A DNA stretch of 64,000 bases from Macrostomum lignano (GCA_002269645.1 NIVC01000945.1:124001-188000), one strand, 5' to 3'. Shown: positions 1,301 to 47,111, counted from the stretch's first letter. Notes: generated by a model from the letters alone, not told the origin. Numbers and translations: made by a program.

Positions 1301-2454
1301 CTAGACGTGCCCCAGTAGAATGCCCATCCCTGATTTATGCAGAAGGTAAACGCCCGCACAATTTCTTCCATTGGCGTGCCCGGATCCGGCCTACTAGCGA
1401 ACACGAGGTCCACGTAGGTCATGCGAAGCCGCCGCAACGAGTCCCGCAGGCCTTCGACTATGCGTTTCCTAGAAAGTCCGCCCTCGGAAGCCGCCGCTCC
1501 GCCCCATTGGTGAATTTTGGTGCTGATTACGTAGGACGAGCGACGCCAGGGCTTCTGCTGGAGGAGGCGGCCGAGCAGCTCTTCGGCTCCACCTGAGGCG
1601 TACACCTCAGCGGTGTCGAATAGATTGATGCCGCAGGCGTAGGCTAGGGTTAGTAGGTCGTCAGCTACGGAATCTGAAATTAAATGAAAAATGGCAGTCA
1701 GACAATCAGAATGAATGGAGAGAGAAATTAATGACAGGAAAGAGTGGATTCTGGGGTAGGAATTGAGAGCTAGGCGGGAGTGGAGTGATGTGTGTACTGG
1801 GGTAGGAATTGAGAGCCAGGCGGGAGTGGAGTGAGGTGGGTGCTGGGGTAGGAATTGAGAGCCAGGCGGGAGTGGAGTGAGGTGGGTGCTGGGGTAGGAA
1901 TTGAGAGCCAGGCGGGAGTGGAGTGAGGTGGGTGCTGGGGTAGGAATTGAGAGCCAGGCGGGAGTGGAGTGAGGTGAGTGCTGGGGTAGGAATCAAGAGT
2001 CAGGCGGGAGTGGAGTGAAGTGGGTGCTGGGGTAGGAAATATAGACACGGACAAGAAGGGAGTTAGGTGGGTGCCAGTACTTTACAGTTTTCATACCGGT
2101 ACAAGAGTACTAACCATCGATCTGGCCAGCAAAGGTGACCCAGGTGCCAAGACCGATGCGCGAAACTCGCAGTCCAGTCCTGCCCAAGTTGTTATAGTGC
2201 AGCTTAGTATCTAGTCGGTACAGTCCCTCTGGATTCTGCTGCTGGTGTTGCTGTTTTTGTTGATAATGCCACCTTTCTTCCGTTCTCCTTGGCGATGACG
2301 AATGAAAGTAGCTGGAAGTTGATGCCTGAGAGTAGGAGTCTTCTGCCCGGTGACGACGAATTCCGCCGCCGCTGGCGAGGGAGGCGGCAGACGCGGAGCC
2401 GGCGGGTGACGACAGGTGGGGTTCTGTAGCGCGCCGCTCCTTGATCAGCTCCAT
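1301..2454 (-). CDS. KCNAB: Voltage-gated K+ channel beta subunit (aldo-keto reductase family), 5' part; exons 2454-2115 and 1673-1301; downstream exons not found in window
   Basis: Splicing gives [27 protein letters not shown]|[25 protein letters not shown]...VISTKI...[44 protein letters not shown]...WAFYWGTSR, which are Kv-beta motifs. GT-AG sites at 2114/1674 (phase 1) and a donor at 1300. An in-frame acceptor at 2473 suggests a further upstream exon. Confidence 0.93.
1745..2070. repeat. ~44-nt minisatellite in KCNAB intron (ggggtaggaattgagagccaggcgggagtggagtgaggtgggtgct)
   Basis: About 6-7 tandem copies. Confidence 0.9.
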
Positions 2455-8712: not shown

Positions 8713-15946
<7,234 letters not shown>

Positions 15947-24700: not shown

Positions 24701-27367
24701 CACTGTGTGGCACAAGTACTGTGTGTGTGCCAGTGACAATGACACTAACACTTAACAGGCAGTGAGGTAGGCAAGCAGGCACTGCGGCAGTGCGGCTGGC
24801 ACTGGCAGTGGCAGTAAGCAAAAAGAAGAAAAGCTGAAGCATTAAGTGTAAGGCACTTGGCATTGGAAGCAGTAAGGAAGTAAGAACCAAATCAATTGAT
24901 TGATTCTTTTATTTGAATTTTTAGTTCCTTTACATAGCTTCAATATAAAGAGCCATGTACACAGTCAGTATTCAGTAAGACAACAAGACAAGACAACAGA
25001 ACAGAACACAAGTGAAGTGACAACACAACACAACACTCAACTGTCTCAACAGAACAGGCAAACAGACAATGGAAATACAAGTAATTAGCTGATACCTGCC
25101 TACCTGCTCACCTACCTACCTAAACGAATATGATTACGAATACGATACTGAGTCTACAACTACAACTACCTACGAATACAATACAAATATGAACACGATT
25201 ACAAACTCTGATAGATAGCAAACTTCTTGGAAAAATGGTAGCCTTGGCCCTTAATAAGTACTTCTTGGAACGTAAATAGGAAATGTTATTTACAAAAGCT
25301 TAAAAATGACAAATCAACTTTTTAAAGAATCATATTTTTGCTTTTAGCCTGCAGCCTGCAGCCTGCAGCGTGTAAAGTGGAATCAATATTGCATCAACTA
25401 TGTTTTAATTTTATCTTCCTGGAAAAAATCCGATCTTCCTGGAAAGTGGAAACTGGCTGTGGCTGACGCTCACGGTCACAGACGCTCACGCTTAGAGCCT
25501 ACTACGAATCAATGATATTGCTACTTCACATCATATCATCTATTACTATTACTGCAGTCGTGCAGTGCTTGAGTCTTGAGTGCTGATGCAATGCTTAACT
25601 GAGTGTTGTGCTGTGCTGTGAATAAAAATAATTTTATTCTTATTTGCACGCAGACGCAGTTAGTGCCTTTAGGGAAAAAAGACTTGTCCCGATTTCCCGA
25701 CTTTTTTAGGGTCGGGCCCGGGCCCGGGTCGGGCCACGATTTTGGTCGGGATTCCCGACTTTTCGGGCCCGGGCCCGGGACTGGGTCGCCCCCTACGCCG
25801 GCCTGTTATCTTTTCTAGTCAGTCCAGGTGGAGTGAGGTGGGTATCGATTTCCCCCCCCCCCGGCCTGTTATCTTTTCTAGTCAGTCTAGGCGGAGTGAG
25901 GTGGGTTTCAATTTATCCCCCGGCCTGTTATCTTTTCTAGCCAGTCTAGGCGGAGTGCAAAGTGGGTGTCATGATAAAAAACTTCAATGCCTTTTAAAAA
26001 ATAAATTTCAGGGCGTTATCGAGTACTCCCTGTGCCTGTTTTTCGCCAAACTGGTCAGCTATACCTTTCTCTATTGGTTGCCAAATTACATTAAGCACTC
26101 CAGCGGTCTCAACCCAGAAGAGAGTGCATTTCTATCAACTCTATTCGATGTTGGCGGCATTGTTGGAGGTGTGTTGGCCGGGGTTGTTAGCGATGTGACT
26201 GGTCGGCGAGCTCTTACCTGCATGATGATGCTGCTTCTTGCGGCACCAATGGTATGTACGAGTACTTTATCTATCTACTAAATTTGTGGTAAATTCTTCT
26301 ATTACATGTACATTTTCATGTGTCCAATCTTCGTAAATTTTAACCATACCCACAATAGGGTATCTATTGTGCATAAATACGCAAATTAGAATTACAATTT
26401 CTGTAGGAATAACTGAATTATAGCAAACTTCTTACATCAACTTTCAGCTGTTTATCTACGAGAAGTTTGGTGACACATCATTATTTAACTCGATAGGTCA
26501 GTTTAACGGATAATTATATTTAATAAATGATTTCTCTTATTTCACATATGAAAGTTTCACTTGAATATATAATTGCCCTTCTAGTCCTACTCCTAATCAC
26601 TGGAGGCTTAGTTAATGGTCCATACGCGCTAATTACTACTGCGGTAAGCGCCGATTTAGGCACGTCAGTTAAAGGTGATTCAAAAGCGCTGGCCACTGTT
26701 ACTGCTATTATCGATGGGACAGGGAGCATGGGTATGTAATATTTACTACTTACTAATTAAGCTACTTATAGTAGGCTATGCATGAATTGTAGCATCAAAC
26801 TTATCTAAATTGAAAAATTCAGGCGCTGCACTCGGTCCTCTGCTGACGGGTCTGATCGTGAATACAGGCTGGCAGAATGTTTTCTACATGCTTATGACTG
26901 CCGATTTGTTGGCTTTGCTTGTAAGTGGCTCCTTTATAGCCAATTTATTGTAGTATATTTTATAGGTTTAATTGCTGTCATCAGCCTACATCCATCTCAC
27001 GCCTTCTCCAACCCACCCAGTACATTCCTGCCCCTGCAGACACCCACCTAACGCCTTCTCCAACCCCCAGTACATTCCTACTCCTCTTCAGACACCCACC
27101 TCACGTCTCCTCCAACCCCCAGTACATTCCTACCCCTCTTCAGACACCCACCTCACGCCTCCTCCAACCCCCAGTACATTCCTATCCTCGCAAACACCGA
27201 CTTCATGCCTTTCTGAACCGCCTCTACTATTTTAATCCCATTTCTCTGCATCTTCGTTCCTATTTCAGCTTCTCTGTCGAATGGGCCTAAGCGAGGTAAA
27301 CGAATGCCGAAATCAAAGAACTGAGCCCGCTTACGAAGATCTGGCCAGAGAAACCACTAGGTCTTAA
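18793..27367 (+). CDS. SLC37A: SLC37 sugar-phosphate/Pi exchanger (MFS), 14 exons, 560 aa (18793-18863, 19156-19237, 19328-19421, 19511-19589, 19691-19826, 20356-20432, 21041-21207, 22439-22482, 23298-23597, 26012-26251, 26448-26496, 26585-26731, 26823-26920, 27269-27367)
   Basis: Motifs [76 protein letters not shown] and [16 protein letters not shown]...[21 protein letters not shown]. All introns are GT-AG and in frame; CDS totals 1683 nt. Paralog (A1/A2/A3) not resolved. Confidence 0.95.
19900..20200. repeat. CT-rich simple repeat in SLC37 intron 5
   Basis: Polypyrimidine (ctctcc)n tract. Confidence 0.9.
21330..22330. repeat. 30-nt minisatellite in SLC37 intron 7
   Basis: gggttcagaatcttggggtttcttagaata, about 30 copies; the 10-codon period creates spurious ORFs. 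Confidence 0.95.
23640..25970. repeat. ~58-nt minisatellite in SLC37 intron 9, split by a hAT insertion
   Basis: Units ctagtcagtccaggcggagtgaggtgggtgtcgatttctccgccggcctgttatcttt at 23640-24275, resuming at 25796-25970. Confidence 0.92.
24276..25795. mobile_element. Non-autonomous hAT-type DNA transposon, 1520 bp
   Basis: Perfect 12-bp TIRs tagggggcgacc / ggtcgcccccta and a perfect 8-bp TSD cgccggcc (24268-24275, 25796-25803). Subterminal tcgggcccgg repeats at both ends; AT-rich non-coding interior. Confidence 0.9.
26985..27210. repeat. ~52-nt C-rich minisatellite in SLC37 intron 13
   Basis: About 4 copies of cagacacccacctcacgcctcctccaacccccagtacattcctacccctctt. Confidence 0.85.
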
Positions 27368-28984: not shown

Positions 28985-31900
28985 TCAGTAACGGAAGAAA
29001 ATCTTCATGGCCAGATTTCCTTCGAGGTCCGGCGAAGTTTCCTCAATGATGTCCTCCTGTTTCTCCACGGGATATCCAGCAGATTCGCGTCCTGCGAACT
29101 GAAAATGAATTTGTGTTTTCATAGCTTGTATTAACCTGCTGCGTGCGAATATTTCAGCCAACATTAAACTCGTACCTTTCTCAGCGACTTTGAACTTTCT
29201 CCAGTTGCAAAAGTTTTAGCCGAATGTCTTTTGAAATAATCAGAATGTTCTTTGCTGTGCGTCTTCCATCCGTGCTTATGCCTCTTAGTTCCATATCCAG
29301 ATTTATGTCCAGACTTATGTCCAGATTTATATCCAGATTTATATCCAGATATATGTCCAGATTTATATCCAGATTTATGTCCAGATTTATATCCAGATTT
29401 ATGTCCAGATTTATATCCAGATTTATGTCCAGATTTATATCCAGATTTATATCCAGATTTATGTCCAGATTTATATCCAGATTTATGTCCAGATTTATAT
29501 CCAGATTTATGTCCAGATTTATATCCAGATTTTGACGTTTTGACGTTTTTGCTAATCTCTTTACCCGCTTTCTTTGCACCTTCTTCGACCCTCTTTGCGC
29601 CTTTCGTAAACTTCTTTTCGGCCTTCTTTGTGTCTTTCTTGACCTTCTTTCCGACTTTCTTTTTGCCTTTCTTCACCTTCTTTGCACCTTTCTTCACCTT
29701 CTTTGCACCTTTCTTCACCTTCTTTGCACCTTTCTTCACCTTCTTTGCACCTTTCTTCACCTTCTTTCCGGCCTTCTTTGCACCTTTCTTCACCTTCTTT
29801 CCGGCCTTCTTTGCACCTTTCTTCACCTTCTTTCCGGTCTTCTTGGCACCTTTCTTCACCTTCTTTCCGGTCTTCTTTGCACCTTTCTTCACCTTCTTTC
29901 CGGCCTTCTTTGCACCTTTCTTCACCTTCTTTCCGGCCTTCTTTGCGCCTTTCTTCACCTTCTTTCCGGCCTTCTTTTTGCCTTTCTTCACCTTCTTTGC
30001 ACCTTTCTTCACCTTCTTTCCGGCCTTCTTTGCACCTTTCTTCACCTTCTTTCCGGTCTTCTTTGCACCTTTCTTCACCTTCTTTCCGGTCTTTTTTGCA
30101 CCTTTCTTCACCTTCTTTCCGGTCTTCTTTGCACCTTTCTTCACCTTCTTTCCGGCCTTCTTTGCACCTTTCTTCACCTTCTTTCCGGCCTTCTTTGCAC
30201 CTTTCTTCACCTTCTTTCCGGCCTTCTTTTTGCCTTTCTTCACCTTCTTTGCACCTTTCTTCACCTTCTTTCCGGCCTTCTTTGCACCTTTCTTCACCTT
30301 CTTTCCGGTCTTCTTTGCACCTTTCTTCACCTTCTTTCCGGTCTTCTTTGCACCTTTCTTCACCTTCTTTCCGGCCTTCTTTGCACCTTTCTTCACCTTC
30401 TTTCCGGCCTTCTTTGCACCTTTCTTCACCTTCTTTCCGGCCTTCTTTTTGCCTTTCTTCACCTTCTTTGCACCTTTCTTCACCTTCTTTCCGGCCTTCT
30501 TTGCACCTTTCTTCACCTTCTTTCCGGTCTTCTTTGCACCTTTCTTCACCTTCTTTCCGGTCTTCTTTGCACCTTTCTTCACCTTCTTTCCGGTCTTCTT
30601 TGCACCTTTCTTCACCTTCTTTCCGGCCTTCTTTGCACCTTTCTTCACCTTTTTTCCGGCCTTCTTTGCACCTTTCTTCACCTTCTTTGCACCTTTCTTC
30701 ACCTTCTTTCCGGCCTTCTTTGTACCTTTCTTCACCTTCTTTCCGGTCTTCTTTGCACCTTTCTTCACCTTCTTTCCGGTCTTCTTTGCACCTTTCTTCA
30801 CCTTCTTTCCGGTCTTCTTTGCACCTTTCTTCACCTTTTTTCCGGCCTTCTTTGCACCTTTCTTCACCTTCTTTCCGGCCTTCTTTGCACCTTTCTTCAC
30901 CTTCTTTCCGGCCTTCTTTGCACCTTTCTTCACCTTCTTTCCAGTCTTCTTTGCACCTTTCTTCACCTTCTTTCCGGCCTTTTTTTTGCCTTTCTTCACC
31001 TTTTTTCCGGCCTTCTTTGCACCTTTCTTTACCTTCTTTCCGGTCTTCTTTGCACCTTTCTTCACCTTCTTTGCACCTTTCTTCACCTTCTTTGCACCTT
31101 TCTTCACCTTTTTTGCACCTTTCTTCACCTTCTTTCCGGTTTTCTTTGCACCTTTCTTCACCTTCTTTCCGGCCTTCTTGGCACCTTTCTTCACCTTCTT
31201 TCCGGCCTTCTTTTTGGCGCCCTTCTTGATCTTCTTGGCGCCTCTGCTAGCGCCGATGGATGCGGCAACGCCTTTCATTCTGTCTTTGCCAGTCTTGGAG
31301 CTGTAGGTGGGCGTGAGCAGTATGACTCCGCACACGCATTTCGGGCACATGGCCTGGCAGGCCCGGCGCAAGCTGTGCAGTCCGCTGCGGGACTTCTTGC
31401 GCCTGATCTGCTGCACCAAATCGGCCGCGGCGTCCGCGTTGTCCGCCTTGGAGAGCAGCTCCTCGATCCATGCGGACTTGGTCCGCTCTACCACTGGGTC
31501 CTCGGCTGGAGCCTCTGCGTCAGTGGCTTCCTGGCTGCTCAGGGCGCAGTTGATGCCTGTGGGGGTAGGGATATTAGTTTAAAGAGCGGAGTTACTCAGT
31601 CAGTTAGTTAGTCAGTTAGTTAGTCAGTTAGTTAGTCAGTTAGTTAGTCAGTTAGTTAGTCAGTTAGTTAGTTAATCAGTTAGTCAGTCAGTTAGTCAGT
31701 TAGTTAGTTAGTTAGTCAGTTAGTTAGTCAGTTAGTTAGTCAGTTAGTTAGTTAATCAGTTAGTCAGTCAGTTAGTTAGTCAGTTAGTTAGTCAGTTAGT
31801 TAGTCATTTAGTTAGTCAGTTAGTTAGTTAATCAGTTAGTCAGTTAGTTAGTTAGTTAGTTAGTTAATCAGTTAGTCAGTCAGTTAGTTAGTCAGTTAGT

Positions 31901-33155
31901 TAGTCAGTTAGTTAGTCAGTTAGTTAGTCAGTTAGTTAGTTAATCAGTTAGTCAGTTAGTTAGTCAGTTAGTCAGTTAGTCAGTTAGTCAGTCAGTCAGT
32001 TAGTCAGTCAGTCAGTTAGTCAGTCAGTCAGTTAGTCAGTTAGTCAGTTAGTCAGTTAGTCAGTTAGTTAGTTAGTCAGTCAGTCAGTTAGTCAGTTAGT
32101 CAGTTAGTCAGTTAGTTAGTTAGTTAGTTAGTTAGTCAGTTAGTTAGTCAGTTAGTCAGTCAGTTAGTTAGTTAGTTAGTTAGTCAGTTAGTTAGTTAGT
32201 TAGTCAGTTAGTTAGTTAGTTAGTTAGTCAGTTAGTCAGTTAGTTAGTTACTCACTGGACGAACCATACGGGCACTTTCGTTGCGCAGCAGTTTCCTCTC
32301 CTCCTCTTTCCTCTTCGAAGACAGTGTTGAGCTCGCTAGAATCGGCCGCTCTACTTGACGAGTCATCGCTGTATGCCAGTCTGTTGAAGTCCGTCAACCT
32401 GTTTACATCTGTGAAAGATTATAAAAACGTTTTTGTGCATCGATGGTTGTAATAGCTTCACAGCTTTCAAACTATTTCGAGTCATATCATACGCGAATCT
32501 CACCTCTTCAAATCTCACCCCCACGAATCTCACCCCTACGAATCTCACCTCTTCGAATCTCACTCCTACGAATCTTACCCGTACGAATCTCACCCGTACG
32601 AATCTCTCCTCTACGAATCTCACCCATACGAATCTCTCCTCTACGAATCTCACCCCTACGAATCTCGCCCGTACGAATCTCACCCCTACGAATCTCTCCT
32701 CTACGAATCTCACCCCTACTAATCTCGCCCGTACAAATCTCACCCCTACGAATCTCTCCTTTACGAATCTATCCTCTACGAATCTCACCCCTACGAATCT
32801 CTCCTTTACGAATCTATCCTCTACGAATCTCACCCCTACGAATCTCTCCTTTACGAATCTATCCTCTACTAATCTCACCCCTACGAATCTCTCCTTTACG
32901 AATCTATTCTCTACTAATCTCACCCCTACGAATCTCTCCTTTACGAATCTCTTGTATAACAATTTTTTTAGTCTTTTTTGTTTCGGTGCTGCTGAATAAA
33001 AATGAACATGAAAATGAAATACTGTGGTACTCACTAATCTCAGGACTCAGCACTGACTCATCATCGCTGGTTGGCAACCCGACAGTCAGCCCGCATGCCA
33101 ACAGAGCAATCAGCAGTATCAGCCAAACCAATCTTATTGACCGCCTTGCTGCCAT
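28985..33155 (-). CDS. Orphan secreted lysine-rich repeat protein, ~922 aa; exons 33155-33035, 32408-32256, 31556-29176, 29098-28985
   Basis: Signal peptide MAARRSIRLVWLILLIALLACGLTVG, then an acidic region, a Cys cluster (CQAMCPKCVC), ~550 aa of KKAGKKVKKGA/KKVKKGA repeats, a GHKS/GYKS block and an acidic final exon ending KIFFRY*. Splice phases 1,1,0 are consistent with GT-AG sites. Confidence 0.85.
31590..32250. repeat. (AGTT/AGTC)n tetranucleotide microsatellite in Lys-rich gene intron 2
   Basis: Read directly. Confidence 0.96.
32490..32950. repeat. 15-nt minisatellite in Lys-rich gene intron 1
   Basis: acgaatctcacccct, about 30 copies. Confidence 0.94.
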
Positions 33156-33984: not shown

Positions 33985-36900
33985 CTACAGCCTCCTGGCA
34001 ACACCGTGATGGTCATCCTTGCCTGTTGTGCAGAGAGAAGTACAGATCACGTGATGCGTAGTTAATTTATGATTGGATTTTGAGAAAAAAAATTGACTGA
34101 ATTCTACAACCACCTTTATATAAACACTCATTATAGCTTCTACTTACTCTCTAGTGCTTTATAAACACTCATTATAGCTTCTACTTACTCTCTAGTGCTA
34201 TATAAACACTCATTATAGCTTCTATTTACTCTCTAGTGCTATATAAACACTCATTATAGCTTCTACTTACTCTCTAGTGCTATATAAACACTCATTATAG
34301 CTTCTATATACTCTCTAGTGCTTTGTAAACACCCATTTTAGTCTTTACTTACTCTCTACTGCTTTATAAACACCCATTTAAGCTTTTACTTATATTCTAG
34401 TGCTATATAAACACTCATTTTAGCTTCTACTTACTCTAGTGCTTTATAAACACTCATTTTAGCTACTACTTACTCTTTACTGCTTTATAAACACCCATTT
34501 AAGCTTCTACTTACATTCTAGTGCTTTATAAACACTCATTATAGCTTCTACTTACTCTAGTGCTTTATAAACACTCATTTTAGCTACTACTTACTCTCTA
34601 CTGCTTTATAAACTCCCATTTAAGCTTCTACTTACATTCTAGTGCTTTATAAACACTCATTTTAGCTACTACTTACTCTCTACTGCTTTATAAACTCCCA
34701 TTTAAGCTTCTACTTACATTCTAGTGCTTTATAAACACTCATTTTAGCTTCTACTTACTCTAGTGCTTTATAAACACTCATTTTAGCTACTACTTACTCT
34801 CTACTGCTTTATAAACACCCATTTGAGCTTCTACTTACATTCTAGTGCTTTATAAACACTCATTATAGCTTCTACTTACTCTTCAGTGCTATATAAACAC
34901 TCATTATAGCTTCTACTTACTCTTCAGTGCTATATAAACACTCATTATAGCTTCTACTTACTCTTCAGTGCTATATAAACACTCATTATAGCTTCTACTT
35001 ACTATTCAGTGCTATATAAACACTCATTATAGCTTCTACTTACTTTTCAGTGCTATACAAACACTCATTTTAGCTTCTACCTACTCTTCAGTGCTATATA
35101 AACACTCATTTTAGCTTTTACTTACTCTTCAGTGCTATATAAACAGTAAACACTCATTTTAGCTTCTACTTACTCTTCAGTGCTATATAAACACTCATTA
35201 TAGCTTCTACTTACTCTTCAGTGCTATATAAACACTCATTATAGCTTCTACTTACTATTCAGTGCTATATAAACACTCATTATAGCTTCTACTTACTTTT
35301 CAGTGCTATACAAACACTCATTTTAGCTTCTACCTACTCTTCAGTGCTATATAAACACTCATTTTAGCTTTTACTTACTCTTCAGTGCTATATAAACAGT
35401 AAACACTCATTTTAGCTTCTACTTACTCTTCAGTGCTATATAAACACTCATTATAGCTTCTACCTACTCTTCAGTGCTATATAAACACTCATTATAGCTT
35501 CTACTTACTCTTCAGTGCTATATAAACACTCATTATAGCTTCTACTTACTCTCTAGTGCTATATAAACACTCATTATAGCTTCTACTTACTCTTCAGTGC
35601 TGTATAAACAGTAAACACTCATTATAGCTTCTACTTACTCTCTAGTGCTATATAAACACTCATTTTAACTTCTACTTACTCTTCAGTGCTATATAAACAG
35701 TAAACACTCATTATAGCTTCTACTTACTCTCTGGTGCTGTATAAACACTCATTTTAGCTTCTACTTACTCTTCAGTGCTATATAAACACTCACTATAGCA
35801 TCTACTTACTCTTCAGTGCTATATAAACAATCACTATAGCTTCTACTTACTCTTCAGTGCTATATAAACACTCACTATAGCATCTACTTACTCTTCAGTG
35901 CTATATAAACACTCACTATAGCATCTACTTACTCTTCAGTGCTATATAAACACTCACTATAGCATCTACTTACTCTTCAGTGCTATATAAACACTCACTA
36001 TAGCATCTACTTACTCTTCAGTGCTATATAAACACTCACTATAGCATCTACTTACTCTTCAGTGCTATATAAACACTCACTATAGCATCTACTTACTCTT
36101 CAGTGCTATATAAACACTCACTATAGCATCTACTTACTCTTCAGTGCTATATAAACACTCACTATAGCATCTACTTACTCTTCAGTGCTATATAAACACT
36201 CACTATAGCATCTACTTACTCTTCAGTGCTATATAAACAGTAAACACTCATTTTAGCTTCTACTTACTCTTCAGTGCTATATAAACAGTAAACACTCATT
36301 ATATCTTCTACTTACTCTTCAGTGCTATATAAACACTCATTATAGCTTCTACTTACTCTTCAGTGCTATATAAACACTCACTATAGCATCTACTTACTCT
36401 TCAGTGCTATATAAACAGTAAACACTCATTTTAGCTTCTACTTACTCTTCAGTGCTATATAAACAGTAAACACTCATTTTAGCTTCTACTTACTCTTCAG
36501 TGCTATATAAACACTCATTATAGCTTCTACTTACTCTTCAGTGCTATATAAACACTCACTATAGCTTCTACTTACTCTTCAGTGCTATATAAACACTCAT
36601 TTTAGCTTCTACTTACTCTTCAGTGCTATATAAACACTCATTATAGCTTCTACTTACTCTTCAGTGCTATATAAACACTCATTATAGCTTCTACTTACTC
36701 TTCAGTGCTATATAAACACTCATTATAGCTTCTACTTACTCCCTAGTGCTTTTTAAACACTCATTATAGCTTCTACTTACTCTTCAGTGCTCTACTCTCT
36801 AGTGCTCTATAAACACTCATTTTAGCTTCTACTTACATTCTAGTGCTTTATAAACACTCATTTTAGCTTCTACTTACTCTTCAGTGCTTTATAAACACTC

Positions 36901-38802
36901 ATTATAGCTTCTACTTACTCTCTTATAAACACTCAACTAAAGTGCTCACCGAGATTAGTGTAAACAATAACGACAATCACCCCGAGCAGAAATACTACTC
37001 CTAACGAGATGAAGATCACGTTGAGAATTTTCCTGAGCAGAGGCAGCTGCAGGTCCTGGATCTGCTCCAATTGGTCGTCATCGATTCGTTTGTCCTGGAT
37101 TTTGAAATTAGTTAAAATAATTTATATATACCTTGGTAAACAAAAGCCATTAATCATATTGCGCGTTGTAACAATCAGAGCAATTCCCCTCCGAGACATC
37201 AGAGCAATTCCCCTCCGAGACATCAGACCAATTCCCCTCCGAGACATCAGACCAATTCCCCTCCGAGACATCAGACCGATTCCCCTCCAAGACATCAGAC
37301 CAATTCCCCTCCGAGACATCAGAGCAATTCCCCCCCGAGACATCAGAGCAATTCCCCTCCAAGACATCAGACCAATTCCCCGCCGAGACATCAGACCAAT
37401 TCCCCTCCGAGACATCAGACCAATTCCCCTCCGAGACATCAGACCAATTCCCCTCCGAGACATCAGACCAATTCCCCTCCGAGACATCAGACCAATTCCC
37501 CCCCGAGACATCAGAGCAATTCCCCTCCAAGACATCAGAGCAATTCCCCGCCGAGACATCAGACCAATTCCCCTCCAAGACATCAGACCAATTCCCCGCC
37601 GAGACATCAGACCAATTCCCCTCCGAGACATCAGAGCAATTCCCCTCCAAGACATCAGATTAATTCCCCTCCGAGACATCAGAGCAATTCCCCCCCGAGA
37701 CATCAGAGCAATTCCCCTCCAAGACATCAGACCAATTCCCCGCCGAGACATCAGACCAATTCCCCTCCGAGACATCAGACCAATTCCCCGCCGAGACATC
37801 AGACCAATTCCCCGCCGAGACATCAGACCAATTCCCCTCCAAGACATCAGACCAATTCCCCTCCAAGACATCAGAGCAATTCCCCTCCGAGACATCAGAG
37901 CAATTCCCCTCTAAGACATCAGAGCAATTCCCCTCCGAGACATCAGACCAATTCCCCTCCAAGACATCAGAGCAATTCCCCTCCAAGACATCAGACCAAT
38001 TCCCCTCCAAGACATCAGAGCAATTCCCCTCCAAGACATCAGAGCAATTCCCCTCCAAGACATCAGACCAATTCCCCTCCGAGACATCAGAGCAATTCCC
38101 CTCCAAGACATCAGAGCAATTCCCCTCCAAGTCATCAGAGCAATTCCCCTCCAAGACATCAGAGCAATTCCCCTCCAAGACATCAGACCAATTCCCCTCC
38201 GAGACATCAGAGCAATTCCCCTCTGAGACACCTCTTTATCCTCTATTTGAACGCTGCCTTCTTTTCTATCGCACGAGATATACCTTGCCATATTCCTTTG
38301 AATCCGACTCTGCTCGACGGTAAGCTTGAAAATTCACGTTTATAATTCATTATTCACTTTTGTCAGTCAACGATTTTCTGAGTAGGTAAAAAGAAAATAA
38401 TCTTCTTATTTCTTTGAAATCAAAATTTACCGATTCAATTTTTTGCTTTAATTAATCTGCATCTACAGAATCTTATCCATGAAATTGCCAAGCCCCAACC
38501 CGATCGGTGAGGCTTTGCATCTGTTAATTCCAGGAAAAGCACATCCGTCAGCCATCGGTTTTAATTAATTCTGACTATTTCCATGCAAAGACACGTGCTG
38601 ATAAAGCCTGCTGATTTTCTTCTTTCAGCTTTCCATAGGGCCGTGCTTTTATTGTTGCATGTAATTGCAGCTCAGGCCTGCATTCCTGGCGGATCTGACA
38701 GTTACCTGAACAGAATAGATTCTTGCACTTTTCACTGCTCTGCTCCTTTTCCCTTCGAGTTTTCTGTTCTGTCTGTTCTGTCTGTCTGTCTGTCTGTCAG
38801 AG

Positions 38803-39114: not shown

Positions 39115-41359
39115 CTGTCTGTCTGTCTGTCTGTCTGCCTGCCTGTCTGTCTCAACCAGCCTCACCTGCAGTAGAGTGACAATTCTATCCACCGTAGGGT
39201 GCTTTCTCGCCCTCCGCATAAACTGCCGGCCGCCCCTGACCCCGTGGCAGCCTCTGCGCTGTCGCTGCTGCCTCTTGGCCTGCGACAGCTGGCCCCGCTG
39301 CTGTTGGCTGCCGGCTCGAGATTTGCCGGACAGCCGGCCCTGGCGTTTCTGCTGCAGCTGCTGCTGCCGAACTGTGGCTGCGAGGCCAACAACGGTGGGA
39401 ATTCGAGTCGTCTGTTGAGTGGCCGACTGCAGAAGCAACGGCTCACCGCCGCTGCCTCCTTCGCTGTTGTCACTGAGCTTCAAAATTTCATTGCTGCTAC
39501 TTGTGCTGCCTTGCCGTCCTTGATGCTGAATCTGAACGTGCTGATGATGATGTTGATGTCGCGTGTAGTCTGTGTAGCGCTGGTGACTTCTGGCCGGCAG
39601 CTCGTATCGGGCGGCTGATGACTCGGCAAGATCTGGCGTGGTGCCGTTTGACGATGACAGCTCGGGGTCCGTGTCTGGGATGAGGAGCAGATGGGTTGAT
39701 GGTTGAGTTTTTGAGATCGGTGGAATGCAGTGAGTTTTATGACAGCGAGACAGGTGACGAGTTTGGTGAGAAGGAGAATAGAGGGAGACAAATGAGAGGG
39801 TGTCAGGTGAGAGAGTTTCAGGTGAGAGCGTGTCAGGTGAGAGGGTGTCAGGTGAGAGGGTTTTAGGTAAGAGGGTGTCAGGTGAGGAGGGTGTCAGGTA
39901 AGAGGGTGTCAGGTAAGAGGGTATGAGGTGAGGAGGGTGTCAGGTGAGAGGGTGTCAGGTGAGAGGGTGTCAGGTGAGAGGATGTCAGGTGAGACGGAGT
40001 CAGGTGAGACGGAGATAATTGAGAGGGAGATACGTGAGAGGGAGATAGGTGGAAGAAAAATTGGTGAGAGGGAGATAGGTGAGAGGAAAATAGGTGAGAG
40101 GTAGATAGGTGAAAGGGAGATAGGTCAGAGGGAGATAGGTGAGGGGGAGATAGGTGAGAGGGAGATAGGTGAGAGGGAGATAGGGGAGTGGGAGATAGGT
40201 GAGAGGGTGTCAGGTGAGAGGGTGTCAGGTTACAGAGTGTCAGGTGAGACGGAGTCAGGTGAGACGAAGATAAGTGAGAGGGAGACAAGGTGAGTGGGAG
40301 ATAGGTGAGAGGGTGTCAGGTTACAGAGTGTCAGGTGAGACGGAGTCAGGTGAGACGAAGATAAGTGAGAGGGAGACAAGGTGAGTGGGAGATAGGTGAG
40401 AGGGTGTCAGGTGAGAGGGTGTCAGGTTAGAGGGTATCAGGTGAGAGGGAGATAGGTGAGAGGGAGATAGGTGAGAGGGAGATAGGTGAGAGGGAGATAG
40501 GTGAGAGAAAGAGAGATAGATGAGCGAGATAGGTGAGACGGAGATACGAGTGTGAGAAGGAGACAGGTGAGAGGGAGACAGGTGAGAGGGAGACAGGTGA
40601 GAGGGAGACAGGTGAGAGGGAGACAGGTGAGAGGGAGACAGGTGAGAGGGAGACAGGTGAGAGGGAGACAGGTGAGAGGGAGACAGGTGAGAGGGAGACA
40701 GGTGAGGGGGAGACAGGTGAGAGGGAGACAGGTGAGAGGGAGACAGGTGAGAGGGAGACAGGTGAGAGGGAGACAGGTGAGAGGGAGACAGGTGAGAGGG
40801 AGACAGGTGAGAGGGAGACAGGTGAGAGGGAGACAGGTGAGAGGGAGACAGGTGAGAGGGAGACAGGTGAGAGGGAGACAGGTGAGAGGGAGACAGGTGA
40901 GAGGGAGACAGGTGAGAGGGAGACAGGTGAGAGGGAGACAGGTGAGAGGGAGACAGGTGAGAGGGAGATAGGTGAGAGGGAGACAGGTGAGAGGGAGACA
41001 GGTGAGAGGGAGACAGGTGAGAGGGAGACAGGTGAGAGGGAGACAGGTGAGAGGGAGACAGGTGAGAGGGAGACAGGTGAGAGGGAGACAGGTGAGAGGG
41101 AGACAGGTGAGAGGGAGACAGGTGAGAGGGAGACAGGTGAGAGGGAGACAGGTGAGAGGGAGACAAGTGAGAGGGAGATAGGTGAGAGGGAGATAGGTGA
41201 GAGGGAAAGAAGTGTCTCACCATCAATAACCTGGTCATCTTCATGGCGCAGCTCTCCTCCACAACCGTATCGATAGCTGCTTGCTGACTGCTGCGGCAAA
41301 TGCAACGGCCGCTTGACCGATTCCTGAGCGTAACATTGAAATTCATCGTCCGAATGCAT
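33985..41359 (-). CDS. Orphan single-pass, C-terminally anchored membrane protein, ~307 aa; exons 41359-41221, 39674-39166, 38324-38232, 37094-36950, 34022-33985
   Basis: Five non-repetitive islands between tandem arrays join in frame at GT-AG sites (phases 1,0,0,1). The product has a Q/H/S/R-rich body, one hydrophobic helix ILNVIFISLGVVFLLGVIVVIVY and a short tail ending GKDDHHGVARRL*. No family recognised. Confidence 0.7.
34110..36930. repeat. ~41-nt minisatellite, ~2.8 kb, filling the last intron of the orphan membrane-protein gene
   Basis: ttctacttactcttcagtgctatataaacactcattatagc variants in homogeneous blocks. Confidence 0.96.
37170..38225. repeat. 24-nt intronic minisatellite
   Basis: agacatcagagcaattcccctccg, about 44 copies. 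Confidence 0.96.
38770..39150. repeat. (CTGT)n intronic microsatellite
   Basis: Read directly. Confidence 0.96.
39790..41210. repeat. 15-nt intronic minisatellite (ggtgagagggagaca)n
   Basis: Near-perfect from 40555 to 41205, degenerate towards 39790. Confidence 0.96.
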
Positions 41360-41929
41360 CTCAGTTCAACAGGGATCCACTTCAGTTGTAGACAGACGCA
41401 GTTAATACTCGTAGAAGGGTGCGCGGCCGGGACTGGAAAATTTGCTATGCTTCTAGGAGCAGTTAGTATTCATCTGTTTTCCACTTCTCTGTGGTCTACT
41501 CCCTCCTAGCGCTCTGCCCCTTCTTTTCCACCTCTCCCCATTCAGTTTCTCAGGCTGAGGCGGCGGTTAGGTTTCCCTTTTTTCTCCCCCCCCCTCGCCG
41601 CCTCGCCTCCCCCTCGCCCTCGAATCGCCGCTCAACCCCTCCCCGAAGCCGTCCCGAGCATTCAAGCAGCTTCTGTAGCGAGGAAATTGAAAAAAATACC
41701 AGCGCTACTTCTTACCTCTAGAATTTTTTCTCCAAGCAGAGTCAACTCGTGACCGAGAGAGAAGGAGAGAGTCTGTGTGTGTCTATCGGGCAGGGAAGCA
41801 GTTGAGAAGTCGCTCTTTTCCTATAAGGCCCTCAAAACCTGAATCGCATAATTAATAAAGCAAAATTTTGTGAGCCATCAAAAAGAAGAAAAAACCTATT
41901 TTTTGTAGCCAGGAGTTTCTCTGGCTAGT

Positions 41930-45398: not shown

Positions 45399-47111
45399 TC
45401 AACTGGTGGTCAACACTCAGAAGACCGTCGTGCTCTGCGTGCCGGACGACATCGAGGCTGCGATTTCGTGCCGAGGCGCTGATGGACAGGCGACAGAGCT
45501 TCCGCGTTGTCAGCAGCTCGTCTACCTCGGCGGTCTGGTTCCCGGCGTCCGCGAGGATTTGCGGCGTCGCTGCGGGCTTGCCTGGGCTGCCTTTCGTTCT
45601 GTGAGGGCAGTCCTGCAGTCAGAGGCCTTACCTGACCGCCAAGAGGGCGGCGTTGTTCCAGGCGCTGATCGAGACCGTCCTGCTGTACAACGCCGAGACC
45701 TGGACGCTGACGGAGTCGCTCGAGCAACAAGTTGACGCGGCGCACGGTGGCCTGCTGCGCGCCGCCTTCAAGATCGTCTACGAGCGAGTGACCAACGCGA
45801 CTTTGTATCGCCGCGCCGGCCTGGTCTGTCCAAGCGACCTGTTGCGCCGTCGGCGACTCCAGCTGGCAGGCCACATCATTCACGCCGCGTCGTACTGCCC
45901 GCAACCGGTGCAGGAGGTGGTGCTGCTATCGCTGCAGACACCCTAACCGGCGGGGGCAGGCCCGCACTCGGCGTTTCGTCGACTGCCTGCTGGCTGACGC
46001 CGGCGCCCCGAATTCGGCCGGCGGCGTGGCGTTCATTCGCAACCTGGCCTTGACGCGCCCTGTGACGCTGAACGCGTATTCTGTTGTTGTTGTTGTTGTT
46101 GCTTCCCACTAATTATATTTTAGCAATACAGGTAGCTTTCATTAAATTTAAAGTATACCCAGATAATCTGGGCGAAACATAGGATATTTAAACTGAAAAG
46201 TTAGTCCAAAACGTGCACACTCTAAGAGTGAAACGCTATCAAAGAAGCCGGGACTGGATCAGCGGTAGTTAACGCGTACGACTCTCGCATCACAGTACCC
46301 AGGGTCAGCGGAATGAGCCTGACTGCTTGTGTCCTCGCTGACTTGCTGACTTCCACCCAGAGGCCCCGGCAAACTGACTAATTAAGCCATCAGAAGGCCG
46401 ATGTTAATGACTTAAAATAGATTTTTAAGTTGAAGAAAGTTTTCCAAGGCATAAAGTGAACCCTCAGTTAGATGCATATTCGGTTTTTCAAGGACTGCTT
46501 TAGAATTTTAGTCATAGCTAGCTATATTTCTATATTGAAAATGGTCGAAGAGAGCATTTCTATTGTCGATGCGTACCAACAGGAAACTATTAGTTTCAGG
46601 ACAGCACAGCTTAGTGCCAAAGTAAACGTGTAAACTATATAAAATATTGCTTGAGTCAATAGGGAGTTGTGTAAAATTAGAAAAAAACGGATCGCCAGCT
46701 CAAATGATAATACAATATAGAATCATCAAATCGTAGTAGTCTTTTGATTATCATTTAAAGTTCTTGCTTCGCATGTGAAAAAACGCGACATGGTGATTAT
46801 CCAAAAATATGATGAGATAATGCCTATAGATTATAATCTTTTATCCTTTCACACGTCTAATAATCGTTTAATCCCACGTGCAAAATCTAGCAACAGGTGA
46901 AAGTAAATAATTGTTGAGTTATTTGCTCAAAGTGGGACAAATTATCAACTGCAGATGATATCTTAATGAAGAAAACGATTAGAATATCGGATAACGTTTA
47001 GTGTCCGCTAAAGCACTTCAGTTTGTCTTTCTTTGGATTAGCTAATTTGCATCTGATCGGTGTTTACCAATCTTTGATCAATCATGCTTTATGCATTAGG
47101 CAAGTGTCCGA

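What the first reader, a model, noticed from the sequence alone, without database searches (positions are those of the whole stretch)
28985..33155. Orphan secreted polycation: signal peptide + acidic pro-like region + ~550 aa of KKAGKKVKKGA
Seen: a 4-exon gene with a classic signal peptide, an acidic segment, a basic cluster (IRRKKSR), a CQAMCPKCVC motif and ~1.6 kb of 33/21-nt repeats whose 11-aa unit is 6/11 lysine, ending in an acidic tail. Lys codons stay on the sense strand and higher-order repeat blocks recur. Established: H1-tail-like Lys/Ala polycations bind polyanions, and Lys-rich secreted proteins occur in invertebrate glues and antimicrobial secretions. Inference: a candidate adhesive/cement, mucus or granule-condensing, or antimicrobial precursor, with acidic flanks neutralising charge until processing.
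Basis: partly seen in the sequence, partly recalled or inferred. Interest (0 to 1): 0.8.

Follow-up and report, generated by a model that had tools for sequence, protein, structure and literature searches.

The report
Secreted poly-lysine protein of a flatworm
A gene of the marine flatworm Macrostomum lignano encodes a probably secreted protein, more than a third lysine, whose 534-residue repeat region has the pattern of one long helix with all lysines on one side; it is probably a glue-like or granule-packing material, but its tissue and function are untested.

Summary
On the minus strand, 33155-28985, four exons with GT-AG borders and matching phases give a 922-aa protein. The window is from Macrostomum lignano.

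The gene is not a strict orphan. One homologue, a 277-aa protein from an RNA-seq contig of unknown organism, has the same layout and an invariant AC.AMCPKCVCGVIL module.

New finding: both repeat units place every Lys on one face of an alpha-helix. This arrangement has the highest hydrophobic moment of all 13,860 permutations. The phase holds over all 534 residues, and AlphaFold2 predicts a helix.

Variants among repeats are mostly synonymous, so the array is under coding constraint.

The acidic flanks (-18) cannot neutralise +326, and the RRKKSR site is not conserved.

Best reading: a secreted binder and condenser of polyanions, acting as a cohesive or glue protein like the K/R-rich regions of flatworm adhesion proteins. 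Tissue, expression and function are untested. I rate it a new variant of a known kind, of moderate interest.

The parts
33035..33155 (-). Exon 1: start codon, signal-peptide-like N-terminus (MAARRSIR + LVWLILLIALLA + CGLTVG), and the start of the acidic region
   Evidence: mean Kyte-Doolittle hydropathy 3.4 over LILLIALLAC; small residues at -3/-1 (TVG|LP); donor gtgagt, phase 1.
32409..33034 (-). Intron 1, mostly a 30/45-nt tandem repeat (32494-32952)
32256..32408 (-). Exon 2: acidic Ser/Asp/Glu-rich segment
   Evidence: The same acceptor at 32408 is used in the public but mis-fused model A0A1I8JRP0.
31557..32255 (-). Intron 2, almost entirely (AGTTAGTTAGTC)n
29176..31556 (-). Exon 3 (2381 nt): end of the acidic region, conserved module, Lys array, linker, SG[Y/H]K array and His/Lys stretch
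31297..31491 (-). Conserved module (aa 114-178): VERTKSAWIEELL...AAADLVQQI...SGLHSLRRACQAMCPKCVCGVILL, with four invariant Cys (CxxxCxxCxC)
   Evidence: Homologue P0005: E 6.8e-16; BLASTP 45% identity, E 1e-22. AlphaFold2 on the 2-sequence alignment: small helical bundle, pLDDT 75, pTM 0.60. No Pfam, PDB or fold match.
29641..31242 (-). Lys array, 534 aa: about 41 units KK[A/T]GKKVKKGA (33 nt) and 11 units KKVKKG[A/K] (21 nt), in higher-order blocks of 219/252 nt; net +298
29530..29640 (-). Unique basic linker: KKDTKKAEKKFTKGAKRVEEGAKKAGKEISKNVKTSK
29299..29529 (-). (SG[Y/H]K)x19 array, 12-nt unit; the Tyr and His units differ only by TAT/CAT
29176..29298 (-). His/Lys-rich unique stretch: GYGTKRHKHGWKTHSKEHSDYFKRHSAK...SLRK
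29099..29175 (-). Intron 3 (77 nt, gtacga...ttttcag). If it is retained, the ORF ends KVRV* at 29164-29166
28985..29098 (-). Exon 4: acidic tail FAGRESAGYPVEKQEDIIEETSPDLEGNLAMKIFFRY plus stop codon. Plausible but unverified
   Evidence: No sequence similarity to the acidic tail of P0005.

Best explanation
This is a real protein-coding gene of Macrostomum lignano. It encodes a secretory-pathway protein of about 95 kDa that acts as an extracellular or granule polyelectrolyte.

Shown by computation:
- The signal-peptide-like N-terminus, the acidic stretch, the conserved helical four-Cys module, the polycation and the acidic tail form a layout shared with one homologue.
- The Lys array is under coding constraint.
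- The array has the register of a single continuous amphipathic alpha-helix: a Lys face of 6 of 11 positions and an apolar stripe G-A-V-A-G.

Inferred:
- The protein enters the ER and is packed into gland-cell granules together with a polyanion such as a sulfated glycan or a phosphoprotein. Its own acidic segments are far too small to do this job.
- Once its charge is neutralised or screened (seawater, polyanion), the array folds into a helix of up to 80 nm. The Lys face bridges anionic surfaces: glycocalyx, mucus, biofilm-coated sand or glass. The small apolar stripe lets helices pack side by side.
- The (SG[Y/H]K)19 block and the His/Lys block supply Tyr, His and Lys for cross-linking or metal or surface bonding.
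- The four-Cys module supplies disulfide links or a sorting signal.

Functionally it would be a cohesive, glue or granule-core component. It would be a stand-alone counterpart of the K/R regions of Mlig-ap1 and of the separate K/R-rich ap3 proteins of other flatworms. Which gland makes it is unknown: adhesive, cement or shell, rhabdite, or prostate.
For: - Gene model with canonical splice sites and matching phases.
- Organism: the only word-index hit is UniRef A0A1I8JRP0 of M. lignano, which contains exon 2.
- Homologue P0005 comes from two intron-less RNA-seq contigs and has the same five-part layout in one transcript.
- The 11-mer and the 7-mer each have the highest possible hydrophobic moment among all permutations of their residues: 11 of 13,860 for the 11-mer, 6.7% for the 7-mer. 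The whole 534-aa array keeps a coherent moment of 0.61 at 98.6 degrees per residue. The mean over 18-residue windows is 0.66, against 0.23 +/- 0.02 for shuffles.
- AlphaFold2, single sequence, gives an unbroken helix over the array with pLDDT up to 93.
- The best PDB sequence matches to the array are designed helical bundles, not histones.
- There is an excess of synonymous variants among the repeats.
- Charge bookkeeping.
- Precedents from the literature: the Mlig-ap1 K/R regions are secreted, bind anionic partners and are blocked by heparin (PMC6410801). Knock-down of the stand-alone K/R-rich Mile-ap3 removes the electron-dense granule core (PMC6745481). Tmed-ap3 is a 'GRKHS' polycation (PMC9229212). 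Tubeworm cement is packed by complex coacervation of oppositely charged components (PMC12621633).
Against: - There is no transcript, expression, localisation or activity data for this gene in anything I could reach.
- No M. lignano transcript joining exon 1 to exon 3 was seen. The only public model (P0001) skips exon 1 and fuses exon 2 to the upstream gene, although that model rests on a frameshifted older assembly.
- The signal peptide was judged by simple rules, not by SignalP. An uncleaved signal anchor is not excluded: the uncharged stretch is 22 aa.
- The helix register is not a family feature. The basic region of P0005 is Lys/Pro-rich and cannot be helical. What is conserved is charge, not helix.
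- The array arose by recent amplification of essentially one unit: 18 of 40 11-mers are identical in DNA. The register therefore counts as one observation, not 52.
- AlphaFold2 is known to over-predict long helices for charged repeats.
- The array is full of Lys-Lys followed by Ala, Val or Gly, so it should be very sensitive to proteases unless it is complexed.
Confidence: 0.45

Rival explanations
1. Host-defence polycation. The protein is secreted onto the epidermis, into mucus or into the gut. It kills or agglutinates microbes through its Lys-faced amphipathic helix, either intact or after cleavage into cationic fragments.
For: - A signal peptide, an acidic pro-like region and a cationic amphipathic helix form the classic layout of linear antimicrobial peptide precursors (established knowledge).
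- The amphipathic register is perfect.
- A weak compositional match, P0004 (231 aa, metagenomic), has a signal peptide, an acidic region and KKVKKAIKKGAKKVKKAV... heptads.
- Long poly-lysines are antimicrobial (established knowledge).
Against: - The apolar face is only Gly-Ala-Val-Ala-Gly. Mean Eisenberg hydrophobicity is about -0.52 per unit (my arithmetic from the scale used), which I judge below what membrane-seeking helices usually have.
- Only 9% of array residues are strongly hydrophobic.
- No spacer or processing sites separate the units. Cleavage at the Lys-Lys pairs would shred the array into 1-3-residue pieces.
- The homologue's basic region is Lys/Pro-rich and not helical.
- The Tyr/His/Lys block has no obvious role in killing.
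Confidence: 0.2
2. Reproductive secretion. The protein is an eggshell or cement-gland precursor that glues and tans eggs, or a prostate (seminal-fluid) protein. Tyr, His and Lys of the SG[Y/H]K block are cross-linked by a phenoloxidase, and the Lys array sticks to the substrate or binds partner-derived polyanions.
For: - The composition of the SG[Y/H]K and His/Lys blocks resembles the Tyr/His/Lys/Gly-rich eggshell precursors of parasitic flatworms and the Lys-Tyr motifs of mussel and tubeworm cements (from my own knowledge, not tested here).
- The protein is rapidly evolving and lineage-restricted, as reported for reproduction-related genes in Macrostomum (title and abstract of PMC7336406).
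- M. lignano has cement glands and attaches its eggs to the substrate (my own knowledge).
Against: - There is no expression evidence.
- The seminal-fluid screen I read makes no mention of lysine, repeats or low complexity in its main text (PMC5977470).
- This rival overlaps with the best explanation. It differs mainly in tissue and in requiring oxidative cross-linking.
Confidence: 0.2
3. Nuclear or sperm chromatin-condensing protein, similar to a histone H1 tail or a protamine. On this reading exons 1-2 do not belong to the transcript, or the N-terminus is not a functional signal.
For: - The Lys/Ala/Gly/Val/Thr composition of the array resembles H1 C-terminal tails and Lys-rich sperm basic proteins (established knowledge).
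- No transcript proves that exon 1 is joined to exon 3.
Against: - There is no linker-histone domain or any other Pfam domain.
- The PDB matches are designed helical proteins, not histones.
- Exon 3 has no in-frame ATG before Met161 inside the Cys motif, and the frame closes just upstream in the intron repeat.
- The homologue's transcript carries a hydrophobic signal-like N-terminus in frame with the same module and basic region.
- The four invariant Cys suggest an oxidising compartment.
Confidence: 0.05
4. Not a functional product. A satellite has expanded inside a decaying or unexpressed gene, in a genome where 30% of this window is tandem repeat.
For: - The window is crowded with satellites that give long accidental ORFs.
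- The array is very young and homogeneous.
- Two frames on the opposite strand are also open.
- The gene is absent from the public protein sets searched.
Against: - The frame is kept over 2.4 kb, through two arrays and three unique segments.
- Every indel in the array is a multiple of 3, and there are no stops although 4-7% of random changes would create one.
- Synonymous variants are in excess.
- All six splice sites are intact.
- The module is conserved, with invariant Cys.
Confidence: 0.08

Closest known systems
[quoted passage not shown]
   Same: - Flatworm origin (Mlig-ap1 is from the same species), a signal peptide, and an enormous low-complexity polycation.
- Gly, His and Ser accompany Lys.
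- These proteins have a proposed or shown role in binding anionic partners and forming the dense granule core (PMC6410801, PMC6745481, PMC9229212).
   Different: - There are no C-type lectin, vWD, C8, TIL or EGF domains.
- Arg is almost absent from the array. The units are Lys/Gly/Ala/Val with a strict helix register, unlike SRKPRRKNRKSRKP-type sequences.
- The protein is much smaller, at 922 aa.
- It has its own conserved four-Cys module.
- Expression in adhesive glands is not known.
P0005, an uncharacterised 277-aa protein from RNA-seq contigs of runs SRR28338163 and SRR28338164 (organism not identified)
   Same: - It is a true homologue: 45-49% identity over the module, with AC.AMCPKCVCGVIL invariant.
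- It has the same order of signal, acidic region, module, basic low-complexity region and acidic tail.
   Different: - Its basic region is only 80 aa, Lys/Pro-rich (KKPGKPxK) and net +26, roughly balanced by its acidic parts (-8 and -9).
- It has no 11/7-mer array and no SG[Y/H]K array.
11-residue amphipathic-helix repeat proteins (apolipoproteins A/E, apolipophorin III, alpha-synuclein, group 3 LEA proteins)
   Same: - The 11/3 periodicity gives a straight polar face and a straight apolar face.
- Folding is expected only on binding or on charge screening.
- Pfam gives weak sub-threshold matches to Apolipoprotein and ApoLp-III.
   Different: - It is not homologous: 18 bits against a cut-off of 90.
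- The polar face is pure Lys with no acidic partners.
- The apolar face is made of very small residues.
- The protein is secreted and carries about +300 net charge.
Polybasic cement proteins of tube-building worms (Pc-1, -2, -4, -5; Sa-5) and Lys/Tyr-rich mussel foot proteins
   Same: - These are secreted, repetitive Gly/Lys/Tyr/His proteins.
- They are packed with polyanions by complex coacervation (PMC12621633; the rest is from my own knowledge).
   Different: - No sequence relationship was tested or is expected.
- DOPA has not been found in flatworm temporary adhesives (PMC9229212).
- Those cements have no long pure Lys helix array.
Histone H1 C-terminal tails and Lys-rich sperm nuclear basic proteins
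   Same: Lys/Ala/Gly/Val composition, polyanion binding, and helix formation on binding.
   Different: This protein has a signal peptide, an acidic N-terminal region and a Cys module. It has no winged-helix globular domain.

Membership tests
New two-member family (this gene + P0005) | Conserved module W-I-x-E-L ... A-A-A-D-L ... S-G-L-x-S-L-x-x-A-C-x-A-M-C-P-K-C-V-C-G-V-I-L, placed between an acidic N-terminal region and a basic low-complexity region | tested here: met
   phmmer E 6.8e-16; BLASTP E 1e-22, 45% identity; alignment with four invariant Cys.
New two-member family (this gene + P0005) | N-terminal signal-peptide-like hydrophobic segment in both members | tested here: met
   Simple hydropathy and the -3/-1 rule. 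SignalP was not available.
Linker histone H1/H5 | Winged-helix globular domain (Pfam Linker_histone) | tested here: not met
   The Pfam scan of the whole protein at E up to 1 shows no such domain. The PDB search with the array finds no histone.
Flatworm adhesion protein ap1 | Core of C-type lectin, vWD-C8-TIL and EGF repeats flanked by K/R regions | tested here: not met
   None of these Pfam domains is present. The domain list is taken from PMC6410801 and PMC8621496.
Flatworm adhesion protein ap3 (stand-alone K/R-rich polycation) | Signal peptide plus a protein made almost entirely of Gly/Arg/Lys (His, Ser) repeats | tested here: inconclusive
   A signal and a Lys/Gly(/His/Ser/Tyr) polycation are present. 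But Arg is only 22 of 922 residues and Ala/Val are prominent. No ap3 sequence was at hand for comparison.
Flatworm adhesion protein ap3 (stand-alone K/R-rich polycation) | Expression in adhesive gland cells; knock-down removes the dense granule core or adhesion | not testable with these tools
   Needs in situ hybridisation and RNAi.
Apolipoprotein A1/A4/E (PF01442) and other 11-mer helix families | Profile match above the curated threshold | tested here: not met
   18.4 bits against a cut-off of 90; ApoLp-III 11.8 bits against 36.3.
Apolipoprotein A1/A4/E (PF01442) and other 11-mer helix families | 11/3 amphipathic periodicity | tested here: met
   Helical-wheel order KKKKKGAVAGK, the highest moment of all permutations, and coherence over 534 aa at 98.6 degrees.
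Linear cationic alpha-helical antimicrobial peptide precursors | Signal peptide, acidic pro-region and cationic amphipathic helix | tested here: met
   This concerns layout only.
Linear cationic alpha-helical antimicrobial peptide precursors | Substantial hydrophobic face and defined processing sites that release peptides of about 12-50 aa | tested here: not met
   The apolar face is G-A-V-A-G. There are no spacers, and the RRKKSR site is not conserved in P0005.

The most novel reading that the evidence does not exclude
The array is a genetically encoded, secreted poly-lysine rod. It would be a single amphipathic alpha-helix of up to about 80 nm carrying about +300 charge. It would fold only when screened by seawater salt or a polyanion. 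It would then act as a reversible electrostatic fastener or coacervate scaffold, a natural counterpart of the poly-L-lysine coating used in laboratories to stick cells to glass. It would be made by a sand-dwelling flatworm and would belong to a previously unrecognised protein family defined by a new four-Cys helical module.
Probability: 0.2. Interest if true: 0.7.

Novelty: new variant of a known kind. Interest (0 to 1): 0.5.

Why it matters
Secreted K/R-rich regions are central to the current model of how flatworms attach and release within a second. Their function is still called enigmatic, and they are hard to study because they sit inside giant proteins of several thousand residues (PMC8621496).

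A compact, stand-alone polycation of 922 aa in the main laboratory species would be a tractable object for RNAi, for antibodies against the unique module, and for peptide biophysics.

The exact helix register is a simple, testable design rule for biomimetic polyelectrolyte adhesives and coacervates.

The case also shows that this gene is absent or mis-fused in the public protein set, probably because repeats break both assemblies and gene models.

Tried and rejected
Look-ups of the exon-3 ORF and of P0001 found nothing on record.
2. Rfam and tRNA scans of the window found nothing.
3. Word-index homology searches:
   - The N-terminal 198 aa hit only the mis-fused M. lignano model P0001.
   - The C-terminal 262 aa gave only three marginal low-complexity hits, P0002-P0004.
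   - The profile of the module found nothing, not even P0005. The index therefore misses things, and the family may be larger than two members.
4. Pfam, PDB sequence and Foldseek searches gave no significant relative for the module, the array or the tail. A strong PDB match of the SG[Y/H]K block to a pyridoxal kinase chain (6su9_A, E 1.5e-16) and to 'OCM3' is, I assume, low-complexity similarity. I did not inspect the alignment.
5. I considered that exons 2-4 belong to the upstream gene, as in P0001, and rejected it. In this window the upstream exon reads ...LLRKILNVIFISLGVVFLLGVIVVIVYTNLGEHFS*. That is a transmembrane segment followed closely by a stop at 36933-36935, which fits a tail-anchored protein. 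P0001's different frame there (PIGADPGPAAASAQENSQ) comes from a frameshift relative to this window. A splice from the gtgagc at about 36950 (phase 1) to exon 2 cannot be formally excluded.
6. The acidic tails of this gene and of P0005 show no alignable similarity, so exon 4 gains no support from homology.
7. Literature searches for the repeat peptides, for the SRA runs and for lysine-rich Macrostomum proteins found no paper describing this gene.
8. I rejected repeat period divisible by 3 as evidence of coding, because 14 of 26 arrays in the window share that property.


Full report
**What is there.** The region 28985-33155 carries a minus-strand gene. I rebuilt it from the sequence.

- Exon 1: 33155-33035.
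- Exon 2: 32408-32256.
- Exon 3: 31556-29176.
- Exon 4: 29098-28985.

All three introns are GT-AG. The donors are gtgagt, gtgagt and gtacga, and the acceptors are cacag, cacag and ttcag. The phases (1, 1, 0) join into one ORF of 2769 nt, or 922 aa.

Introns 1 and 2 are almost wholly tandem repeats. Exon 4 is the least certain part: without that splice the protein ends ...SLRKVRV* at 29164.

**Layout of the protein.**

| Residues | Segment | Features |
|---|---|---|
| 1-26 | Signal-peptide-like N-terminus | MAARRSIR / LVWLILLIALLA / CGLTVG |
| 27-135 | Acidic stretch | Net -15 |
| 136-198 | Basic, Cys-containing segment | IRRKKSR and ACQAMCPKCVCGVILL |
| 197-730 | Lys array, 534 aa | 56% Lys, net +298 |
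| 731-767 | Unique basic linker | |
| 768-844 | (SG[Y/H]K)x19 | 10 Tyr, 9 His |
| 845-884 | His/Lys-rich stretch | |
| 885-922 | Exon 4 tail | Net -3 |

The whole protein has 349 Lys. The mature protein would be about 95 kDa with a net charge of about +326.

**Is it coding or just another satellite?** This question matters because 30% of the window is tandem repeat. In addition, 14 of 26 arrays have periods divisible by three, and several give long accidental ORFs.

Four observations argue for coding.

- The frame runs unbroken from unique sequence, through the 33/21-nt array, a unique linker and the 12-nt array, into a unique tail. All six splice sites are intact.
- The unique sequence just upstream of the array has a homologue in which a basic low-complexity region follows at the same place.
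- Among the repeat units there are 9 synonymous and 5 non-synonymous variant types. Two of the non-synonymous types together make a single Ala-to-Lys change. The expected synonymous share is 21-27%, giving P of 0.0006-0.004. There are no stops and no frameshifts.
- All length variation is in whole 11- or 7-codon units.

The array is young. Of 40 canonical 11-mers, 18 are identical in DNA. It is organised in higher-order blocks: one 7-mer ending in Lys followed by six or seven 11-mers of types A A A T T (T) A. These blocks are 219 and 252 nt long.

**Organism and annotation.** The N-terminal 198 aa hit one protein among 5.8 billion: UniRef A0A1I8JRP0 of Macrostomum lignano (P0001).

P0001 is a fused model. 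It contains exons of the upstream gene (41365-41222, 39684-39145, 37100-37021) and then exon 2 of this gene, entered at the same acceptor. It then reads out of frame and stops in the donor.

In this window the upstream gene's last exon reads DKRIDDDQLEQIQDLQLPLLRKILNVIFISLGVVFLLGVIVVIVYTNLGEHFS*. That is a transmembrane segment followed closely by a stop at 36933-36935. This fits a tail-anchored protein that ends there. A 2.8-kb 41-nt satellite and about 950 bp of unique sequence separate it from the ATG at 33155.

I therefore treat the two as separate genes. A splice from 36950 to exon 2 is phase-compatible, however, and only transcript data can exclude it.

**Relatives.** Three word-index searches found no real homologue. 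The exhaustive HMMER search of 1.84 billion representatives with the non-repeat part of exon 3 found one: P0005, 277 aa, E 6.8e-16.

P0005 comes from two identical intron-less contigs of about 0.9 kb in RNA-seq runs SRR28338163 and SRR28338164. I could not identify the organism.

P0005 has five parts in the same order:

- a hydrophobic signal-like N-terminus;
- an acidic region;
- the module VEATKRSWIAELTEKAGRTEAAADLIEEIQSRTSSSGLRSLKAACKAMCPKCVCGVILMP;
- an 80-aa Lys/Pro-rich basic region (KKPGKPxK, net +26);
- an acidic tail (net -9).

Homology is confined to aa 114-173 of this gene (45% identity, E 1e-22). The four Cys of CxxxCxxCxC are invariant. IRRKKSR, Cys85 and Cys94 are not conserved.

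So the gene is not a strict orphan. It belongs to a very small, uncharacterised family. The transcript of its relative shows that signal, module, polycation and acidic tail occur in one mRNA. That is indirect support for joining exon 1 to exon 3 here.

**The module.** No Pfam family passes threshold, for this protein or for P0005, and no PDB sequence relative passes threshold. AlphaFold2 on the two-sequence alignment gives a small bundle of three or four helices (pLDDT 75, pTM 0.60). No fold match is better than E 0.27.

The module's role is unknown. I suggest disulfide linking or granule sorting, and this is inference only.

**The array has an exact helix register.** On an 11/3 helical wheel the unit KKAGKKVKKGA reads K-K-K-K-K-G-A-V-A-G-K. 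All six Lys are contiguous, and the apolar stripe is symmetric with Val at its centre. On a 7/2 wheel KKVKKGA reads K-K-K-G-V-A-K.

- Each arrangement has the largest hydrophobic moment possible for its composition. For the 11-mer that is 11 of 13,860 distinct permutations, or 0.08%. For the 7-mer it is 6.7%.
- The 7-mers are in register with the 11-mers. The whole 534-aa array keeps a coherent moment of 0.61 at 98.6 degrees per residue.
- The mean moment of 18-residue windows at 100 degrees is 0.66, against 0.23 +/- 0.02 for shuffled arrays.
- AlphaFold2, given a single sequence, predicts one unbroken helix over the 165 array residues supplied, with pLDDT up to 93. The N-terminal part of the same model is below 50.
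- The best PDB sequence matches of the array are designed helical bundles and repeat proteins, not histones. Pfam gives sub-threshold matches to apolipoprotein 11-mer families.

Four caveats apply.

- The array descends from essentially one unit, so the register is one observation.
- AlphaFold2 favours helices for charged repeats.
- Lys-Lys repulsion should keep the free chain unfolded until it is screened.
- The relative's Lys/Pro region cannot be helical, so the family-level constant is positive charge.

**Charge bookkeeping.** The acidic parts sum to about -18, against +298 for the array.

In the short relative the idea nearly holds: -8 and -9 against +26. This suggests an ancestral balanced design that the M. 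lignano array has outgrown. A separate polyanion would be needed for packing.

**Most likely function.** I read the protein as a secreted polyelectrolyte that binds and condenses polyanions, serving as a cohesive, glue or granule-core component. The precedents are close.

- In the same species, adhesion protein Mlig-ap1 carries about 3,600 aa of Lys/Arg regions with pI above 14. Heparin and other sulfated sugars abolish attachment and remove Mlig-ap1 from the footprints. Free Lys, free Arg and a cationic peptide block release (PMC6410801).
- In Minona the K/R-rich part is a separate protein, ap3, whose knock-down removes the electron-dense granule core (PMC6745481).
- In Theama, ap3 is a 'GRKHS' polycation (PMC9229212).
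- Tubeworm cement is packed by complex coacervation of oppositely charged components (PMC12621633).

The Tyr/His/Lys tetrapeptide block and the His/Lys block are the kind of sequence used for cross-linking, metal binding or surface bonding in other extracellular materials. That comparison comes from my own knowledge and was not tested here.

This gene is not ap1, because it has none of ap1's domains. I could not test it against ap3 sequences.

Confidence that it is a real gene for a secretory polycation is about 0.8. Confidence in the specific cohesive or condensing role is about 0.45.

**Rivals.**

- Host-defence polycation (0.2). The layout fits and the helix is amphipathic. However, the apolar face is too weak, no processing sites separate the units, and the relative is not helical.
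- Reproductive secretion such as egg cement, eggshell or seminal fluid (0.2). This overlaps with the best reading and differs mainly in tissue and in requiring oxidative cross-linking.
- Nuclear or sperm chromatin protein (0.05). Against it are the signal in both family members, the absence of a histone fold, and the lack of a start codon in exon 3 before the Cys motif.
- Non-functional satellite expansion (0.08). Against it are the constraint signals listed above.

**Novelty and interest.** Secreted K/R-rich low-complexity polycations are a known kind in flatworm and marine adhesion. This one differs in four ways: a new conserved module, near-pure Lys rather than Lys/Arg, an exact 11/7 helix register, and a compact size. 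I rate it a new variant of a known kind.

Interest is moderate (0.5). The protein would be a tractable handle on the unexplained role of K/R regions in temporary adhesion, and it offers a neat design rule for polyelectrolyte materials. Against that, nothing about its expression or activity is known yet.

Noticed in passing
window 36933-37094, 39145-39684, 41222-41365 (minus strand): This is the upstream neighbour gene. In this window its last exon encodes a transmembrane segment followed closely by a stop (...VIFISLGVVFLLGVIVVIVYTNLGEHFS*), which fits a tail-anchored protein. The public model A0A1I8JRP0 ('CG11148') reads this exon in another frame and fuses it to exon 2 of the Lys-rich gene. 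That model looks like an artefact of a frameshifted assembly.
   Followed up: partly
window 34117-36921: A 41-nt satellite of about 64 copies (2.8 kb) fills most of the space between the two genes. Overall about 30% of the window is tandem repeat with TRF score of at least 200, in 26 arrays. Several arrays give long ORFs in more than one frame.
   Followed up: partly
window ~47000-60500 (minus strand): A long series of exon-sized ORFs shares the pattern ...GPVLIRF.TD....GF.L.Y. Two reach or nearly reach the Pfam CUB threshold (56671-57012 at 28.9 bits; 53320-53787 at 20.2 bits). They probably belong to one or more multi-CUB-domain genes with internal duplication. For example, 47937-48785 and 53835-54245 share near-identical stretches.
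   Followed up: partly
window 51233-51703 (minus strand): An ORF with a helix-turn-helix similar to that of the Sleeping Beauty (Tc1/mariner) transposase. The match is below the Pfam threshold (29.9 bits against 43). It is probably a transposon remnant inside the CUB-gene region.
   Followed up: no
window 12101-12445 (+) and 25742-26281 (+): An exon of a neutral/alkaline ceramidase (Pfam Ceramidase_alk, E 2.4e-33), and an exon of a major-facilitator transporter (MFS_1, E 2.4e-07, just below threshold).
   Followed up: no
window 2110-2454 (minus strand): An ORF ending ...[28 protein letters not shown]. By eye it looks like the start of an aldo-keto-reductase or potassium-channel beta-subunit domain. 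It had no Pfam hit at E of 0.01 or better.
   Followed up: partly
P0004 (loci L001-L003; ENA ERZ6864208, Logan ERR9287621 and ERR9287622): A 231-aa protein from a metagenome with a signal peptide, an acidic region (EDDEEEIEK) and Lys heptads (KKIKKAAKKVKKAIKKGAKKVKKAVKKGAKKVGKG...). The layout resembles this gene, but the match is marginal (E 6e-3). It may be convergent, and it might be an antimicrobial-peptide-like precursor of an unknown eukaryote.
   Followed up: partly
aa 768-844 of the protein (window 29299-29529) against PDB 6su9_A and 9ufe_CA: The SG[Y/H]K block gives strong sequence matches to a segment of a pyridoxal kinase chain (E 1.5e-16) and to a protein called OCM3 (E 2.1e-09). 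I assume these are low-complexity inserts of similar composition and did not inspect the alignments.
   Followed up: no
profile search: The word-index search with the module profile did not return P0005, even though P0005 is in that collection. Negative results from that tool should therefore not be read as absence of relatives.
   Followed up: no
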